A stretch of 64,000 bases of DNA from Macrostomum lignano (GCA_002269645.1 NIVC01001856.1:124001-188000), one strand, 5' to 3'. Positions 37,311-45,401 are shown, numbered from the stretch's first letter. Translations and numbers: made by a program. The notes: generated by a model not told the origin, from the sequence alone.

Positions 37311-39671
37311 AGATTCTGCCCAGTTCGCACACAATATCAGTCTATAAATTCTAGTAAAAAATTTTACGTCAATAAGGACATTGTCACAACTCACATACTG
37401 ACTATTGCAGGAAAGAGACGCGTCAGACAAAATTAGATGTAGCTATACTTGATGAATACACAGACAGACACGATATAATCCAAATCCAGCGGGGTGAATT
37501 CCGCGGGATTAAGCACGGGGAACACACATATATAGGCATATACGGGAGATAGAAACCGTATAAAACGGCACAAGGGAGGGGGGATTGACAGTTCTAAGCA
37601 TGGCTTTATGCAGAAATCCCAACAGCCAATGAGAATGAAAGGACACTTTGACATTAAATTCAAACTACTAGACTGGCTGATGTTTGAGCAGGCTGGGTGA
37701 GACAGAGTTCAGCCAGATGGATTTAGATGAGGAGAAAGCGAAAAAGAAAAGTAAAACTCTTCTCGTGCCCGCGCGCTGCAGCCGGGGTCAGAGAAATCCC
37801 CGAACAGCGCGGCGCCGCACTTTCTTGCCTCCTCCCCGAAAGAACAAGCTCGTTGGCCAATGAGCGATCAGGTGATTAGCTGTGATTAGCAGAATCTGAA
37901 TTCTGAGCATTCCGAGACTTGACTAGCCTCCTGTTTGCGTGCGAGTTGAGCACAACGAATGCAAAACCATCCGACCCTTCTCCCCAGAAGGAACAAGCTT
38001 AGCCGGCCTAAGTTGATTTACACTAGGCTCAGTGGAGATGAAGCCAGCTGAGCTCACTTCAGTAACAGAGGCTGAGCATTGTAATCAAAGCCGAAATAAT
38101 TTTGCAGATTTCAATAAGAGCAAGCTCTAATGATTCTGCAATGCAGAAACAGAAGAACCATGGCATACATGGGGGCACTCCATCGAATTGAGATAAATTT
38201 ACCTTTCATATTATTTTATATTTGATAATGGATTAAACCATACTTTAAACTTTGGCATCCTGAATTCCTACCCCAGATGCCTAATTGAAACTCTGTTTTT
38301 CCAAGCTGTGAACAGAGTCCACACACTCTGCAACTTTCATGGGTCAGAGAGGCTTAGGTAGAGAAGTGTGAAAAGTAGATATTCCAGCCATTTTCAATTG
38401 GGCATCCTGAATTAAGACCTAGGATGCCAAATAGAACTACAATTCTAATATCAAAAAACATAACAGATAAAAAACAATACTAATACTCACTACAATCTAA
38501 TTTTTCTTTGAAAGAAAGAGCAAAAAGCTCATCTAAATCATAAAAATATTGTCAACCTAATTTGATATCAAATGCCCCAAGCCTTGGCTTTAAGTTAAGA
38601 CTCCTCTGTTTGCTTTTTTTCAATAATCCAATGTGATAAGAAAACTGATGAATAAAGGGCAAAATATGAGTATATTATATATTTTTGCCTTTAACATCCC
38701 TTCTTAAATTCATTTAAATTATATTAATCAAGTATACTTTTACTTTTTATATATAACTGATAATATTCTTAGAGTAAAATCATACAGGGTATAAATTAAA
38801 TAGAAAGCCAAAAAGAGACAGAGCAGCCAGTTTCTTTATTGAGTTTAATAACTATTTACTATTTCTTCTTTAACTAATTAAATTTACTTTGAACCTTTTG
38901 GCAGTCTTTAAAATAGACTCATTTCCTTAGATTGAGAAAAGTCCAAGCATTAATAGAATTAGTAGCCATTTAGAAAAAGAAATATCCTAGCCTATTAATC
39001 TAAAGAAATTGTTTCAAGCAATACAAACCTCTTAGAACTATGACACTCTGATCTTAGGAATGCCCAAAGAGAAAGAAATCCCTTATAAGATAAACAGTGC
39101 TATACAATATAACTACTTAGGCTAGACTCATGCGCTAGGGGCCTACTCAATAGATAATCCATATGTTACCAATAAACAATGCATGCACTACCAGTAATGT
39201 ATATACATTGTGCATATTGTGATGGTGTCAAATTCTGTTTGTCCAATACTTTATGGATTATTTAAACTTAACATATAATAGATATGTGATTTTTCAATAT
39301 AATCTTAATTAATTAACCTGATCTATTCTAATCTAATCTAATCAATACTTGAGTTTGTTTTAATTGTATCTCAAAAGTGAACTATTTTGAAGCATAATTA
39401 TTGTCTCTTTTTACCCTCTACTCTGCTCTCTATGCAGGCACTAGCATTGTCTTGTGACCAATCATATGCTACAGTCTCTATTGCAAAAAACTCAATCTAT
39501 TACATGCTAGACTAAAGGCCCTTCATTATATTACACATTTAACAACTACAGAAGCCTGTCCCTTTCAACTGTAAATTGACTGTCAATTAAATAAAAATAA
39601 AAATATTCTTATATATTCTTAGCAAAAGCATACTTTATGACTATACTACTTTTCACCTTGTCACATTTTAA

Positions 39672-39723
39672 TGGAGGTCCCACCAAGACTCAAACTTGGG
39701 TTGCAGGATTCAAAGTCCTAAGT
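39672..39723 (-). pseudogene. 3' half of tRNA-Gln(UUG) with encoded CCA, hypermutated at CpG sites
   Basis: Minus strand ACTTAGGACTTTGAATCCTGCAACCCAAGTTTGAGTCTTGGTGGGACCT-CCA: anticodon arm AGGA-CTTTGAA-TCCT, T arm, acceptor 3' strand; T-loop TTC changed to TTT; 5' half absent. Confidence 0.8.
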
Positions 39724-42461: not shown

Positions 42462-42621
42462 GCAACCTTGGAAATCACTTAGCCATTTCTATTGGCAACA
42501 CACACACACACACATGTAAGTCACTATTGGCTAAGAGCAATCACGTGATTACTATTTTGTCCAATAGCAACTTACATATATATGTTGCCAATAGAAATGG
42601 CCAGATAGATCCCTAGGTTGC
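42462..42621. mobile_element. Palindromic hairpin MITE (~160 bp)
   Basis: Arms GCAACCT..GCCATTTCTATTGGCAACA..TGTAAGT..CTATTGG pair across the central AATCACGTGATT. Confidence 0.8.
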
Positions 42622-45401
42622 ATCCAAGCATGGTGCAAACTATTAGAGTTAGGTCCCAATGGGCTCTCTTTGTAGTATATACCAAGCCCTATTTGGCTAA
42701 CTTTTTGTACAAAGAAAAAGTTAAAATAATCATCTAGGCCTACAGCTTTTAAAAGTAAAACTAGTCAGTTTCAGTTAAACAATGAATGTCAATAATTATT
42801 ATCCAAAAGAATAATAATAAGTCTTGAAAATATATATAATAAGGCACATTTTTTTCTAGAAATGTTTAATATTTTATTGCTAAATTGAATTCCCACCAAA
42901 AAAACATTTTAAAACATGATCATTTGTTTAAATATGTTATTTGTTCTACTTAGGTGAATTTTGTTTTAATTATGTAATCAATTTTGTTATGAATAGAGTT
43001 TTGTTTTCATTGTGATTGGTCAGCCAATGGGAGTATTATTCAAGTAGTATAAATAAAAGCTAAATAAATACTAGAATACTTCAACCTTGGAAGTTACCCT
43101 ACTAGTTAATCTTTATTTGGTTCAAACTAAAACTGAATAGTCTTTTGTCTTAAGTTATTTGAGGAATATTAAATTAATGATTGTTGAATGAAACATGATT
43201 GTGGGTTAGAAGAGCCATGTTGGATAGAATAAGGGCATTTTGCTAGCTAAATAAGCATTTTGCAATAAAAAGAGAAAGGCAGATTGCCCAGATAAGGTGG
43301 GAATTCCCCAGGAATAAGTAAACTGTTACAATTGAAATACAGGATGTATTGCTAAAAGTTGGAAATGACAGTATAAAAGCTAGAAACCCTTGGTCATTAA
43401 TAATACTATATTGGACTATATAACTTAATAATTAGTAGTCAGCAATGTCTTGCCACTTAGGCACTGATGCTACTAGGGTAACTTGTACTGATAATAGCCC
43501 ATATATGTATATCTCTAGGATAGGACAATTAGACCTAGTACAAATTGGTGGCTAGTCCAACTAGTAGGAGTTAGATAGGGAAGACCATAGTCCAGATCAT
43601 GCTAGGTGTACACCTAAACAAAAGTTTATATTTACAAATGAATGCTAAAAAAATGCAGTACACACCTATTCTTAAAACTCTGCCAATGTTGCAACAATAA
43701 ATGACCTTTTTACGTTGTGACAATAAATGACTTTTTTCATTGTGTAATAGATTCTTTTTGACATAATTTGATTAATTTTCCTATCTTTTCAGAGATACAA
43801 TTTATAATAGAAAATTGATATATGCAAAGATTTGTTTAAAAGCCTTATTACAAGCTTAAAAACCAGAAAGCATGAAATTTTGGCTTAAAATAAACTTTTT
43901 TTCATGATTTTTCTACTTTACAATAACTCTTATGCATGATTCTATAAAGTGCATGCTAGGTGTATTTTCTTAGGAATGATGCATACCAACTGTGCAAAGC
44001 CAAAGCCAATGCACGCCTAAATTTTTGGCATTTACTAGATTATTCAGAGTATAGAGGGAAGAAATAGGTCTATAATAACTTAGAGTCAGTGATGAAATTT
44101 TAATAATTAGAGAAAAGTTTTGCTTTACAATATATATAAAAGAGGGAAATGTATATTCACTTATTAAAATTTAAATTTAAATTAAATTTACTTATTTAAA
44201 AATAAGTAAATTGATAAAAAAAGCATTAAACAATTTGGTAATTTTGACTAGAGAAAAAATTAAAAAATTTAAATTTCATGCAAAATAAAGCTATGTTCAA
44301 AGTCTTTCTAGATAAAACTAAGCCTGTGGTACAAAGAAAAAAGCTGAAGGCTATTACCAAAAGCCTCTTTAGCTTTTTATATGTAGGCCTAGGCCCTAGC
44401 CTAGCCTAGCGTAGCCTAAGTAGGTTATTAGATAGATATTCATAGAAAAATTACAATACCTAGTTAAAATTCAGCGGGTTGTGCAAGTATGATCTTAGTG
44501 AAATAGATGTATATATTCGACCTATACTAGGTCTACACAACCTGAGAAATGAGAATGAGATCATCTGTATCAGTTCTAACTTATGGTTCTATACAATACA
44601 CTAATGTCGTAATGACAATTTGGAATGAAAAAGGCCTATAAACTCAGTCATCAAAAGCTAGGCCTACATAAGGATAGTGGTATTAGCTAAGTTGAATAAG
44701 ACTTTATAGATGACCTAAAGAAGGCTTAATAGACAAATGAAAAATAAAAGACTAGATAGATTTGTACTTTATGAAGGACGGATAAAAAAAGGCCTAACTT
44801 GTCACAAAAATGTTTATCAACAACAAGTCTAGATTTCGCACAAGTTTTACTTATGCTTGCCTTCCTCATTGTATAGTTTAAAAAATTCTGTGACAGAGAA
44901 TTTTGCTTAATTATATTTTACTACCTCTACAGTTCAATAAATTGTCGACTTTTGTTTTAATTTCTTTTATGAAATGGACCTAACCCCGCTAATGGATGCG
45001 TGAAATGTGGTTTAGGTCAGAACCCGAAGTCCATAAGTCGTCTATTATGTTGAGTAATCCCAGAAGCTACTTTCATTGTTTTCATTGTTGTTACTTTCAT
45101 TCAATTAGTGGCGTCATATTTCAAAATAAGTAATATACTTTTTATTTCTTAGCATTTTCAACACGTCCTCCTGTGCGAAAGGTTATTTGCTGATTATTTA
45201 AAACGTAAATTAGTATAAGCATTATAAAAAAATAATTAAAAAATGAAAATGATAACCTGATGGCTAGACTTATTTGATTACCTTTGCTAAGCAGCATCCA
45301 ATTATCACTATACACAGGACAATAGCAAACATGTCGGGAGCCACCTATTTATCGAACGGATAATTAATTTTGTAATTACGCTAAATTTGCATAGATACAA
45401 A

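What the first reader, a model, noticed from the sequence alone, without database searches (positions are those of the whole stretch)
38190..44900. Sharp ~6.5-kb CpG-desert, TpA-rich block: footprint of local methylation-driven or RIP-like C-to-T hypermutation in an animal genome
Seen: by hand I count only 11 CpG between 38190 and 44460, against about 7 in the 250 bp of equally AT-rich DNA at 44991-45240 and abundant CpG elsewhere. A 240-nt sample (43381-43620) gave roughly TpA/ApT 38/25 and (CpA+TpG)/(ApC+GpT) 27/32. So TpA is in excess and CpA/TpG is not, unlike simple CpG decay. Three embedded elements (tRNA fragment, hairpin MITE, TGTCGCGACA-type repeats) show C>T/G>A changes at inferred CpG sites with few other differences. 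Known: 5mC deamination gives CpG>TpG/CpA; fungal RIP (RID/DIM-2) additionally gives CpA>TpA and raises TpA/ApT. Inference: a domain-restricted cytosine mutator (dense DNMT methylation, a RIP-like process or an APOBEC-type deaminase) acted on this repeat-derived block, possibly an undescribed genome-defence system.
Basis: partly seen in the sequence, partly recalled or inferred. Interest (0 to 1): 0.9.

Follow-up and report, generated by a model that had tools for sequence, protein, structure and literature searches.

The report
CpG-free mutating domain in flatworm genome
A 6.3-kb non-coding stretch upstream of the AKT gene of the flatworm Macrostomum lignano has lost about 92% of its CpG sites and, unlike its neighbours, keeps changing at CpG and CpA cytosines, most likely because it is densely methylated in the germline of a genome that otherwise shows no trace of methylation.

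Summary
The CpG desert is real. There are exactly 11 CpG in 38185-44410, giving CpG o/e 0.077 at GC 0.30, against about 136 expected (P~6e-44). GpC is normal.

The window is Macrostomum lignano contig NIVC01001856.1. The block is also present in two other contigs of the assembly and is equally CpG-poor in the diverged homeolog. It is therefore neither a chimera nor recent foreign DNA. It is non-coding and single-copy.

Comparing window and homeolog shows a cytosine-context mutation pattern confined to the block.
- Only 3 of 15 aligned CpG sites are shared, against 107 of 120 in the adjacent flanks.
- 65% of all transitions are CpA/TpG<->TpA: 4.3% per site against 1.0-1.6% in other contexts and 0.86% in non-coding flanks (p=1e-10).
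- The CpA rate is highest at CAC/CAG and drops to zero at the right edge of the desert.
- Flanks show no CpG or CpA effect.

The APOBEC (5'-T) signature is absent.

The best reading is a long-standing, still active, DNMT1/DNMT3-methylated germline domain whose 5mC, at CpG and probably CpA, deaminates. The direction of change and the methylation itself remain untested.

The parts
38190..44460 (.). Core CpG desert. Non-coding and single-copy, GC 0.303, 11 CpG (o/e 0.077), GpC o/e 1.51. It is also the domain of raised CpG and CpA/TpG<->TpA divergence between homeologs. In the record it is NIVC01001856.1:162190-168460.
38005..38189 (.). Left shoulder. CpG density falls from about 6-7 per 100 bp to 3 CpG in 185 bp, and GC falls from 0.48 to 0.34.
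44461..44990 (.). Right shoulder. It is still AT-rich (GC 0.32), but CpG o/e is 0.52, 6 of 7 CpG are conserved in the homeolog, and there are 0/153 CpA<->TpA changes. This is where the mutational domain ends.
39675..39743 (-). Degenerate tRNA-like remnant, below the Rfam threshold. The T-loop reads UUUGA instead of UUCGA.
   Evidence: no ARAGORN hit
39149..39763 (.). 615-bp segment present in the window and L004 but absent from homeolog L003. Only 3 bp (AAT) of homology at the junctions and no CpG. Whether it is an insertion or a deletion is unresolved.
41770..41869 (.). 100-bp segment absent from homeolog L003.
42462..42621 (.). Imperfect 160-bp palindrome centred on CACGTG, with a (CA)n tract. 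The arms differ by 13 transitions and 4 transversions. Using the arms as outgroups for each other, all 4 polarisable window/L003 changes are C>T, 2 of them at CpA.
41850..41874 (-). Copy 1 of the motif TGTYRYRACAATAAAKGACC, inverted relative to copies 2 and 3.
43687..43737 (+). Copies 2 and 3 of the same motif, in tandem. They differ at TG/CG and CA/TG positions (TGTTGCAACA against CGTTGTGACA).
43982..43983 (.). Site where homeolog L003 carries an extra 275 bp. The extra segment holds 3 CpG and is bounded by the 7-bp direct repeat ATGCCAA.
31282..35300 (-). Neighbouring AKT (RAC serine/threonine kinase) gene, four coding exons, product PAA63313.1 (586 aa). The block starts 2.9 kb upstream of its start codon. 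The exons have normal CpG content.

Best explanation
The block is native, old, non-coding Macrostomum lignano DNA. It has been, and probably still is, a densely cytosine-methylated domain in the germline of a genome that is otherwise essentially unmethylated.

Inferred mechanism: DNMT3 deposits 5mC at CpG and, more weakly, at CpA (preferring CAC/CAG), and DNMT1 maintains the CpG marks. 5mC deaminates to T faster than it is repaired. CpG therefore decays to TpG/CpA, at about 25 times the CpC/CpT rate if the sequence is stationary. CpA decays to TpA at about 3.4 times that rate. The result is CpG at 8% of expectation and GC at 30%.

Shown:
- the depletion itself;
- the presence of the block in three contigs;
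- equal depletion in the homeolog;
- CpG turnover and CpA<->TpA excess specific to the domain;
- edges that coincide for the two signals;
- no such effects in the flanks.

Inferred:
- that the agent is 5mC;
- that the changes run C>T;
- that the process acts in the germline;
- what targets it to this place (unknown; possibly old transposon debris or heterochromatin).
For: - Depletion is specific to CpG. GpC o/e is 1.51, as in native DNA (1.26-1.39). The rises in CA/TG, AG/CT and CC/GG are those expected after CpG loss (AG/CT as a marker of methylation-driven CpG loss: bioRxiv 10.64898/2026.09.02.747768).
- The block is in NIVC01001856.1 (the window), NIVC01002889.1 (L004, about 99.9% substitution identity) and NIVC01001497.1 (L003, 94-98%). 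L003 has 12 CpG, o/e 0.087.
- CpG sites shared: 3/15 in the block against 107/120 in the adjacent flanks (p=4e-8). 11 of the 12 differences are CG<->TG/CA.
- Over about 25 kb of flanks, CpG sites change no faster than other G/C sites (1.68% against 1.59%).
- Transitions next to a 3' A: 70/1638 (4.27%) in the block, against 1.0-1.6% in other contexts and 0.86% in non-coding flanks. OR 3.6, p=1e-10. Transversions and other transitions are only about 1.4 times the flank rate.
- The +2 base matters: C/G gives 6.8% and A/T 3.2% (p=0.002). This is the order known for DNMT3 non-CG methylation in mammals (from my own knowledge).
- The CpA signal is present in every bin of the block (2.1-6.6%) and is 0/153 immediately right of 44460, which is equally AT-rich (p=0.0009).
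- The four polarisable changes in the palindrome are all C>T.
- M. lignano retains DNMT1 and DNMT3 and has low-level 5mC (PMC11292947, PMC9246332, PMC10658182).
- A second, 1.5-kb non-repetitive CpG-free AT-rich stretch lies in an unrelated locus (L007 2103-3580).
Against: - No methylation data were seen for this locus.
- The homeolog comparison is unpolarised. The CpG turnover fits two models equally well: a steady state with strong CpG hypermutability, or a past depletion to about 3 CpG followed by ordinary TpG/CpA>CpG gains (my estimate).
- CpA<->TpA could in principle be T>C at TpA.
- If CpA>TpA had been raised for a long time, CpA should be depleted and TpA enriched. Yet CpA/TpG o/e is 1.18 and TpA is only 0.90. 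So the CpA component is either young, or balanced by a reverse flux, or not what I think.
- Germline non-CG methylation is not an established feature of invertebrates (from my own knowledge).
- Published overall 5mC in this species is low.
- CpG o/e of 0.08 is lower than in mammals and needs a very high CpG rate.
Confidence: 0.55

Rival explanations
1. Relic of past methylation. The domain was methylated and lost its CpG before the homeologs separated, but is no longer methylated. Present CpG differences are new CpGs arising by ordinary transitions at the abundant TpG/CpA sites.
For: About 10 CpG-creating events are expected from about 650-780 TpG/CpA sites at the observed non-CpG T>C rate, and 9-11 CG<->TG/CA differences are observed. 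The one difference polarisable with three copies (42106/42107) is by parsimony a CpA>CpG gain in the window copy.
Against: It leaves unexplained the domain-restricted CpA<->TpA excess, which arose after the homeologs split and ends at the same edge. It also needs an even more extreme ancestral state (about 3 CpG in 5.5 kb) and a stop at about the time of duplication.
Confidence: 0.15
2. A methylation-independent regional mutation bias. For example, a heterochromatic, late-replicating or fragile AT-rich domain with a peculiar context-dependent spectrum, including T>C at TpA, combined with some other cause of CpG avoidance.
For: The direction of the CpA/TpA changes is unknown. CpA is not depleted in composition. 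The block as a whole diverges faster than the flanks (ts 2.27% against 0.85%, tv 1.09% against 0.76%).
Against: - The contexts affected (CpG far above CpA, with CpT and CpC at baseline, and CAC/CAG favoured) are those of cytosine methyltransferases.
- The equally AT-rich DNA at 44461-45300 shows neither effect.
- Melting-driven deamination would favour A/T at +2 and would also affect CpT. Neither is seen.
- The 4 polarisable changes are C>T.
Confidence: 0.12
3. A dedicated RIP-like or deaminase-based genome defence (a RID-type methyltransferase/deaminase or an AID/APOBEC-like enzyme) that mutates this block as a recognised repeat or invader.
For: CpA>TpA is the classical RIP dinucleotide. The block is AT-rich with fairly sharp edges, like RIP-affected regions of fungal genomes. 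It contains transposon-like debris: a tRNA-like remnant, a palindrome and inverted motif copies.
Against: - RIP indices fail: substrate 1.39 where <=1.03 is required, and composite -0.4.
- CpG, not CpA, is the main target.
- The flanks are duplicated to the same degree and untouched.
- The block has no further copies in the sequence sampled.
- There is no 5'-T/5'-C or WRC dependence and no strand-coordinated clusters: 37 changes on + and 33 on -, interleaved.
- RID is known only from fungi (from my own knowledge).
Confidence: 0.06
4. Foreign or artefactual DNA: a contaminant, an assembly chimera, or a recent horizontal transfer from a heavily methylated (vertebrate-like) genome, still carrying the donor's composition.
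For: The dinucleotide profile apart from GpC resembles vertebrate DNA: CG 0.08, CA/TG 1.18, AG/CT 1.13, CC/GG 1.20. The block has no similarity to the rest of the window.
Against: - It is present, collinear with the same flanking genes, in three independent contigs, including a homeolog 2-6% diverged.
- Both flanks share M. lignano repeats.
- GpC o/e of 1.5 matches the host.
- The context-specific changes occurred inside this genome after duplication.
- An ancient insertion that attracted methylation cannot be excluded, but nothing identifies a donor. There is no Pfam hit in any of the six frames and no long ORF under alternative codes.
Confidence: 0.03

Closest known systems
Germline 5mC-driven CpG depletion, as in vertebrate bulk DNA, and the low-CpG 'methylated compartment' of mosaic invertebrate genomes (Ciona, Nematostella, honeybee, oyster)
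   Same: CpG-specific loss with normal GpC. Secondary excess of TpG/CpA and AG/CT. CpG sites hypermutable relative to other cytosines. The host has DNMT1 and DNMT3. Methylated and unmethylated compartments lie side by side.
   Different: In mosaic invertebrates the methylated compartment is mainly the bodies of housekeeping genes, and its CpG o/e is only moderately reduced (from my own knowledge). Here the exons of AKT, NOX, FAXC and SULT have normal CpG. The depleted unit is a 6-kb intergenic block with o/e 0.08, below the mammalian average, and with fairly sharp edges.
Non-CG (CpA) methylation by DNMT3A/DNMT3B in mammals (CAC in neurons and oocytes, CAG in embryonic stem cells)
   Same: The order of contexts in the substitution spectrum is CpG >> CpA > CpT, CpC, with C or G preferred at +2.
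   Different: This is known as an epigenetic mark of particular vertebrate cell types, not as a heritable mutational footprint. It is not established in invertebrate germlines. Here it is inferred only from unpolarised substitutions.
Fungal repeat-induced point mutation (RIP) and the AT-rich blocks it creates (Neurospora, Leptosphaeria)
   Same: A delimited AT-rich block. C/T changes concentrated at CpA. Transposon-like debris inside.
   Different: The host is an animal. CpG rather than CpA is the main target. CpA is not depleted (substrate index 1.39, composite index -0.4). It is not triggered by duplication, since the duplicated flanks are unaffected. No RID-type enzyme is known outside fungi.
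Methylation of transposons and integrated foreign DNA in some invertebrates and protists (e.g. PMC12344493, title and abstract only, seen)
   Same: Methylation concentrated on particular non-genic islands in an otherwise weakly methylated genome.
   Different: No transposon or viral coding remnant can be recognised in the block. It is single-copy per subgenome.

Membership tests
Germline-methylated, CpG-depleted domain (DNMT1/DNMT3) | CpG strongly under-represented while GpC is not | tested here: met
   CpG o/e is 0.077 and GpC o/e 1.51. 11 CpG observed against about 136 expected, P=6e-44.
Germline-methylated, CpG-depleted domain (DNMT1/DNMT3) | CpG sites mutate by transition far faster than other cytosines, in the domain only | tested here: met
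   Block: 3/15 CpG shared, and 11/12 changes are CG<->TG/CA. Adjacent flanks: 107/120 shared. Wider flanks: CpG 1.68% against non-CpG G/C 1.59%. The comparison is unpolarised. Under stationarity the CpG rate is about 25 times the CpC/CpT rate.
Germline-methylated, CpG-depleted domain (DNMT1/DNMT3) | Host encodes maintenance and de novo cytosine-5 methyltransferases | not tested
   Taken from the literature: DNMT1 and DNMT3 are conserved and 5mC is low in M. lignano (PMC11292947, PMC9246332, PMC10658182). The primary paper (Wasik 2015) is not held in the library.
Germline-methylated, CpG-depleted domain (DNMT1/DNMT3) | 5mC actually present on the domain in germ cells | not testable with these tools
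   Needs bisulfite, EM-seq or nanopore data mapped to NIVC01001856.1:162190-168460.
DNMT3-type non-CG methylation footprint | C/T changes at CpA exceed those at CpT and CpC, with CAC/CAG preferred | tested here: met
   YA 4.27% against YC 1.46% and YT 1.02% (p=1e-10). YAC/YAG 6.8% against YAA/YAT 3.2% (p=0.002).
DNMT3-type non-CG methylation footprint | Changes run C>T (deamination) rather than T>C | tested here: inconclusive
   Only 4 changes could be polarised, using the palindrome arms. All are C>T, 2 of them at CpA. Composition does not show CpA depletion.
Fungal-type RIP | RIP indices: TpA/ApT >= 0.89, (CpA+TpG)/(ApC+GpT) <= 1.03, composite > 0 | tested here: not met
   The values are 0.98, 1.39 and -0.4. 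Native AT-rich DNA gives 0.91, 1.21 and -0.3.
Fungal-type RIP | Acts on duplicated sequence as such | tested here: not met
   The flanks are present in the same three copies, yet show no context effect and low divergence.
AID/APOBEC-type editing | Dependence on the 5' neighbour (TpC, CpC or WRC) and strand-coordinated clusters | tested here: not met
   Rates by 5' base are A 3.2%, C 2.7%, G 1.7%, T 1.6%. The effect lies in the 3' base. There are 37 changes on + and 33 on -, interleaved along the block.
Contaminant, chimeric join or recent horizontal transfer | Absent from allelic or homeologous copies, or flanks from different genomes | tested here: not met
   Present and collinear in L003 and L004. 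The flanks share host repeats.
Transposable element or repeat family | Terminal repeats or target-site duplication at the edges, coding remnant, or other copies | tested here: not met
   No terminal repeats at the edges. No Pfam hit in six frames. No copy in the window, L001 or three unrelated loci.

The most novel reading that the evidence does not exclude
Macrostomum lignano concentrates its scarce cytosine methylation in rare, sharply bounded islands. There it is so dense, at CpG and also at CpA, that it acts as a local mutator, eroding the sequence in the germline. This would be an animal counterpart, by an ordinary DNMT route, of the mutagenic silencing that fungi achieve with RIP. It may be aimed at old mobile-element debris or nucleated from a site near the right edge, where the CpA signal is strongest and ends abruptly.
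Probability: 0.2. Interest if true: 0.8.

Novelty: new variant of a known kind. Interest (0 to 1): 0.6.

Why it matters
[quoted passage not shown] This locus gives a concrete, testable prediction of where that methylation sits: in discrete non-genic islands rather than in gene bodies.

It also suggests that methylation there is dense enough to leave a stronger CpG deficit than in mammals, together with a CpA-context mutational footprint. To my knowledge, such a footprint has not been described for an animal germline.

The three-copy structure of the genome provides a built-in clock for measuring context-specific mutation rates. If confirmed by methylome data, the locus would be a compact model for three questions:
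- how methylation is targeted and bounded in a mostly unmethylated animal genome;
- whether non-CG methylation is older than vertebrates;
- how methylation shapes local base composition.

If methylome data show nothing, the locus documents an unexplained, sharply bounded, context-specific mutation regime.

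Tried and rejected
1. Coding content. Six-frame translations of 38100-45000 against Pfam gave no hit. The longest ORF is no longer than in shuffled sequence, and mitochondrial, ciliate and flatworm codes give no convincing ORF. 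A NUMT, virus or transposase remnant is therefore rejected.

2. tRNA and Rfam. Nothing reaches threshold. With relaxed thresholds there is only a degenerate tRNA-like match and hairpin look-alikes of miRNA families.

3. Copies of the block or its parts elsewhere. None in the window or L001 and none in three unrelated loci.

4. Terminal repeats or target-site duplications at the edges. None.

5. Oligonucleotide signature (3- and 4-mers without CpG) to decide between native and foreign. Correlations of block to native DNA were 0.28-0.52, against 0.48-0.68 for native to native. This is inconclusive without a foreign control.

6. Reaching the homeolog.
- Look-ups of ORFs in and around the block were not on record.
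- Testing ten splice variants found the annotated 586-aa product, which uses the acceptor at 34342. The ids of its cluster members were accepted and gave L003 and L004.

7. Polarising the changes. L004 is too close to the window, with only 4 substitutions in the block. The 615-bp and 275-bp indels could not be assigned as insertions or deletions. Only the palindrome arms gave 4 polarised changes.

8. Replicating the analysis on the second desert. The only other copy obtainable (L008) is 100% identical there, so it gives no substitutions.

9. The primary paper on the M. lignano methylome (Wasik et al. 2015) is not held.

Full report
**1. What the window is**

A single-exon gene of the window (FAXC/GST-like, 20352-21128) is encoded identically on two contigs of assembly GCA_002269645.1. 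One of them, NIVC01001856.1, is 100% identical to the window, so record coordinate = window + 124000. Protein names returned later identify the organism as the free-living flatworm Macrostomum lignano.

The window carries ordinary animal genes:
- a THAP9-like transposase ORF;
- a nicotinic receptor;
- MIOX;
- a sulfotransferase;
- FAXC;
- an NADPH oxidase;
- AKT on the minus strand at 31282-35300.

About 25 minisatellite arrays lie in introns and spacers.

**2. The observation**

The hand count is right.
- Exactly 11 CpG lie between 38185 and 44410.
- Per-kb CpG o/e is 0.04-0.12, against about 0.8-1.1 elsewhere. GC is 0.28-0.32.
- Over 38190-44460, CpG o/e is 0.077 while GpC o/e is 1.51.
- About 136 CpG would be expected at the native ratio, so P=6e-44.
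- All other long CpG-free stretches of the window are minisatellites whose unit lacks CpG. This is the only non-repetitive desert.
- The left edge lies between about 38005 and 38190. On the right, CpG returns gradually from 44410 (o/e 0.52 in 44461-44990), although the DNA stays AT-rich to about 45300.

Its counts for 43381-43620 are exact (38/25 and 27/32), but the sample is atypical. For the whole block:

| Measure | Block | Native AT-rich DNA |
|---|---|---|
| TpA/ApT | 0.98 | 0.91 |
| TpA o/e | 0.90 | 0.81-0.86 |
| CpA/TpG o/e | 1.18 | 1.07 |
| (CpA+TpG)/(ApC+GpT) | 1.39 | 1.21 |
| Composite RIP index | -0.4 | -0.3 |

. The 0.81-0.86 range for TpA o/e spans both native non-coding sets; the other native values are for the AT-rich set.

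The 'embedded elements' are thin evidence:
- There is a sub-threshold tRNA-like remnant at 39675-39743(-). Its T-loop CpG reads TpG, but it has many other defects.
- There is an imperfect palindrome at 42462-42621.
- Three copies of a 19-25-nt motif differ at CG/TG and CA/TG positions.
- The postulated ancestor TGTCGCGACA is nowhere in the window.

**3. What the block is not**

- It has no coding remnant in any frame and no long ORF under any code tried.
- It has no RNA family hit above threshold.
- It has no terminal repeats at its edges.
- It has no similarity to the rest of the window, to L001 or to three unrelated loci.
- Both flanks share host repeats.

**4. The homeologs**

An exact-sequence look-up of ten splice variants then found the annotated 586-aa AKT (PAA63313.1) and its two cluster mates. 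Those ids were accepted and returned the upstream 10 kb on the two other contigs.

- L004 (NIVC01002889.1) is collinear with window 35307-44762. It has only 4 substitutions in the block, so it is an allele or a very recent duplicate.
- L003 (NIVC01001497.1) is the diverged homeolog, 94-98% identical through the block. It has three large indels (615 and 100 bp extra in the window, 275 bp extra in L003) and some smaller ones.
- The L003 block has 12 CpG in 5931 bp (o/e 0.087, GC 0.304).

The block is therefore real, native and older than the duplication. Chimera, contaminant and recent transfer are excluded.

**5. CpG turnover**

Of 15 aligned positions that are CpG in either copy, 3 are shared, 6 are window-only and 6 are L003-only. 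Eleven of the 12 differences are CG<->TG/CA.

In the flanks directly adjoining the block, 107 of 120 are shared (p=4e-8). Over about 25 kb of alignable flank, CpG positions change by transition no more often than other G/C positions (1.68% against 1.59%). So there is no sign of methylation-type mutability outside the block.

One caveat comes from my own estimate. With about 780 TpG/CpA sites in the block, ordinary T>C changes alone would create about 10 new CpGs over this divergence. The pairwise data therefore fit two models equally well:
- a steady state, with C>T at CpG about 25 times the CpC/CpT rate;
- a relic depletion that is now recovering.

**6. The substitution spectrum by dinucleotide**

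I counted only sites whose two neighbours are identical in both copies and that lie more than 5 columns from a gap. Satellites were masked.

| Region | Transitions | Transversions | C<->T by 3' base |
|---|---|---|---|
| Non-coding flanks (10.9 kb, GC 0.42) | 0.85% | 0.76% | A 0.86%, C 0.98%, G 0.76%, T 0.83% |
| Block (4.75 kb) | 2.27% | 1.09% | A 4.27% (70/1638), C 1.46%, G 1.57%, T 1.02% |

- The excess next to a 3' A has OR 3.6 and p=1e-10.
- CpA/TpG<->TpA changes are therefore 65% of all transitions in the block. That is about 5 times the flank rate, while everything else is about 1.4 times.
- The 70 sites are dispersed, with 37 on one strand and 33 on the other. The window carries CA at 40 of them and TA at 30.
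- The +2 base matters: CAC/TAC 7.2% and CAG/TAG 6.5%, against 3.1-3.3% before A or T (p=0.002).
- The 5' base matters little, and T is the lowest.
- Along the sequence, the CpA signal is 2.1-2.9% in the left 2.8 kb and 4.0-6.6% in the right 3.5 kb. It is 0/153 and 1/136 in the two bins right of 44460, which are just as AT-rich (p=0.0009 for the boundary bins). It is 0.5-2.0% left of 38190.
- Two independent signals, CpG loss or turnover and CpA<->TpA excess, thus delimit the same domain.
- The palindrome arms can serve as outgroups for each other. The four polarisable window/L003 differences are all C>T, two of them at CpA. This is too few to settle the direction.

**7. Interpretation**

The contexts affected are CpG far above CpA, with CpT and CpC at baseline, and CAC/CAG favoured. 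This is the substrate order of cytosine-5 methyltransferases of the DNMT3 type, with DNMT1 maintaining CpG (established knowledge for mammals). It is not the order of APOBEC-type deaminases, which depend on the 5' neighbour. RIP is not supported either: its indices fail, CpG is the main target, and the equally duplicated flanks are untouched.

The literature available here says M. lignano, unlike planarians and parasitic flatworms, keeps DNMT1 and DNMT3 and has low-level 5mC. [quoted passage not shown]

I therefore read the block as a dense, long-standing germline methylation island whose 5mC deaminates. The average rise in GC>AT rate implied by the CpA and CpG effects (about 1.7-2 times, my estimate) is of the size needed to take GC from 0.42 to 0.30.

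Weak points:
- there are no methylation data;
- the direction of change is not polarised;
- CpA is not depleted in composition, which it should be after long one-way CpA>TpA pressure. The CpA component may be younger, or balanced by a reverse flux, or have another cause.

**8. How general it is**

Three unrelated M. lignano loci (66 kb) contain no second 6-kb desert. Most of their CpG-free stretches are tandem repeats.

L007 2103-3580, however, lies inside the range of an F-box-like gene. It is a non-repetitive 1478-bp stretch with no CpG at all, GC 0.33, GpC o/e 1.45 and AG/CT 1.34. Its other copy (L008) is identical, so no spectrum could be obtained.

Such deserts thus seem to be a recurrent minor compartment: roughly 6% of the 130 kb sampled, a very rough figure.

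**9. Verdict**

- The observation of a sharp CpG desert is confirmed.
- The compositional 'RIP-like' argument is not.
- The general inference of a domain-restricted cytosine mutator is supported by new evidence from the homeologs.
- Ordinary DNMT methylation, at CpG and probably CpA, is the most likely agent (confidence 0.55).

It is a new variant of a known kind of feature. It is of moderate to high interest because it predicts where and how a flatworm methylates its genome, and because it points to a CpA mutational footprint that I have not seen described for an animal germline.

Noticed in passing
L007 2103-3580 (NIVC01000223.1), identical in L008 (NIVC01001459.1): A second, smaller CpG desert: 1478 bp with no CpG, GC 0.33 and GpC o/e 1.45. 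It is not a tandem repeat and lies inside the range of a called F-box-like gene. It has no sequence similarity to the window block beyond a 35-nt chance-level match.
   Followed up: partly
window 9355-45829 against L001/L003 and L004: The locus exists in three contigs. Two are nearly identical (about 99.9% outside indels) and one is 2-6% diverged. This fits the recently duplicated genome of this species. The AKT gene range is 4.0 kb in the window, 5.9 kb in L004 and 7.7 kb in L003; in L003 the extra length is longer or repeated intronic minisatellite DNA, and L004 was not examined.
   Followed up: partly
window 34336-34342 (-): The AKT exon 2 acceptor is a tandem CAG/CAG pair 6 nt apart. The annotated 586-aa products use the upstream one (adding Pro-Arg). 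The 584-aa product on NIVC01001497.1 is flagged partial.
   Followed up: partly
window 45405-45605, 47044-47572, 52243-53048, 57792-59051: A family of related 41-84-bp minisatellites (core GGTGCTGAAGGATTGAAGGCATGGGGAAGGGG) recurs four times to the right of the block. The array at 45405-45605 is framed by an approximately 85-bp direct repeat (about 45310-45395 and 45606-45680), as if carried by a mobile element.
   Followed up: no
window 14120-14474: A pure (AGT)118 microsatellite sits within the MIOX gene region between coding ORFs. It produces long poly-T/V/Y reading frames.
   Followed up: no
window 3157-5124 and 5555-6037 (+): An intact 655-aa THAP9/P-element-transposase-like ORF is followed by a 160-aa ORF. 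The closest proteins are two M. lignano paralogs at 54-55% identity. The exact product is not on record as a called gene.
   Followed up: partly
window 49151-49783 (-) and 54944-55264 (+): Retroelement fragments lie in GC-rich, CpG-rich DNA to the right of the block: an RNase H-like ORF and an ORF that looks like the zinc-knuckle C-terminal end of a LINE ORF2 (judged by eye, not scanned against Pfam). A 175-bp repeat at 51154-51331 also occurs at 7048-7214 and 8398-8570.
   Followed up: no
window 38244-38289 and 38391-38436: There are two 46-nt direct copies (74% alike), 147 bp apart at the left end of the block. Each holds a short inverted repeat (GGCATCC...GGATGCC).
   Followed up: no
window 38190-44460 against L003: The CpA<->TpA rate rises from left (2-3%) to right (4-6.6%) across the block and then stops abruptly at 44460, whereas the left edge is gradual. 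This asymmetry could reflect spreading from a site near the right end.
   Followed up: no
(search with window 34605-35360, AKT exon 1): The homology search did not return the M. lignano AKT proteins, although they are in the collection. Negative results of that tool should be read with care.
   Followed up: yes
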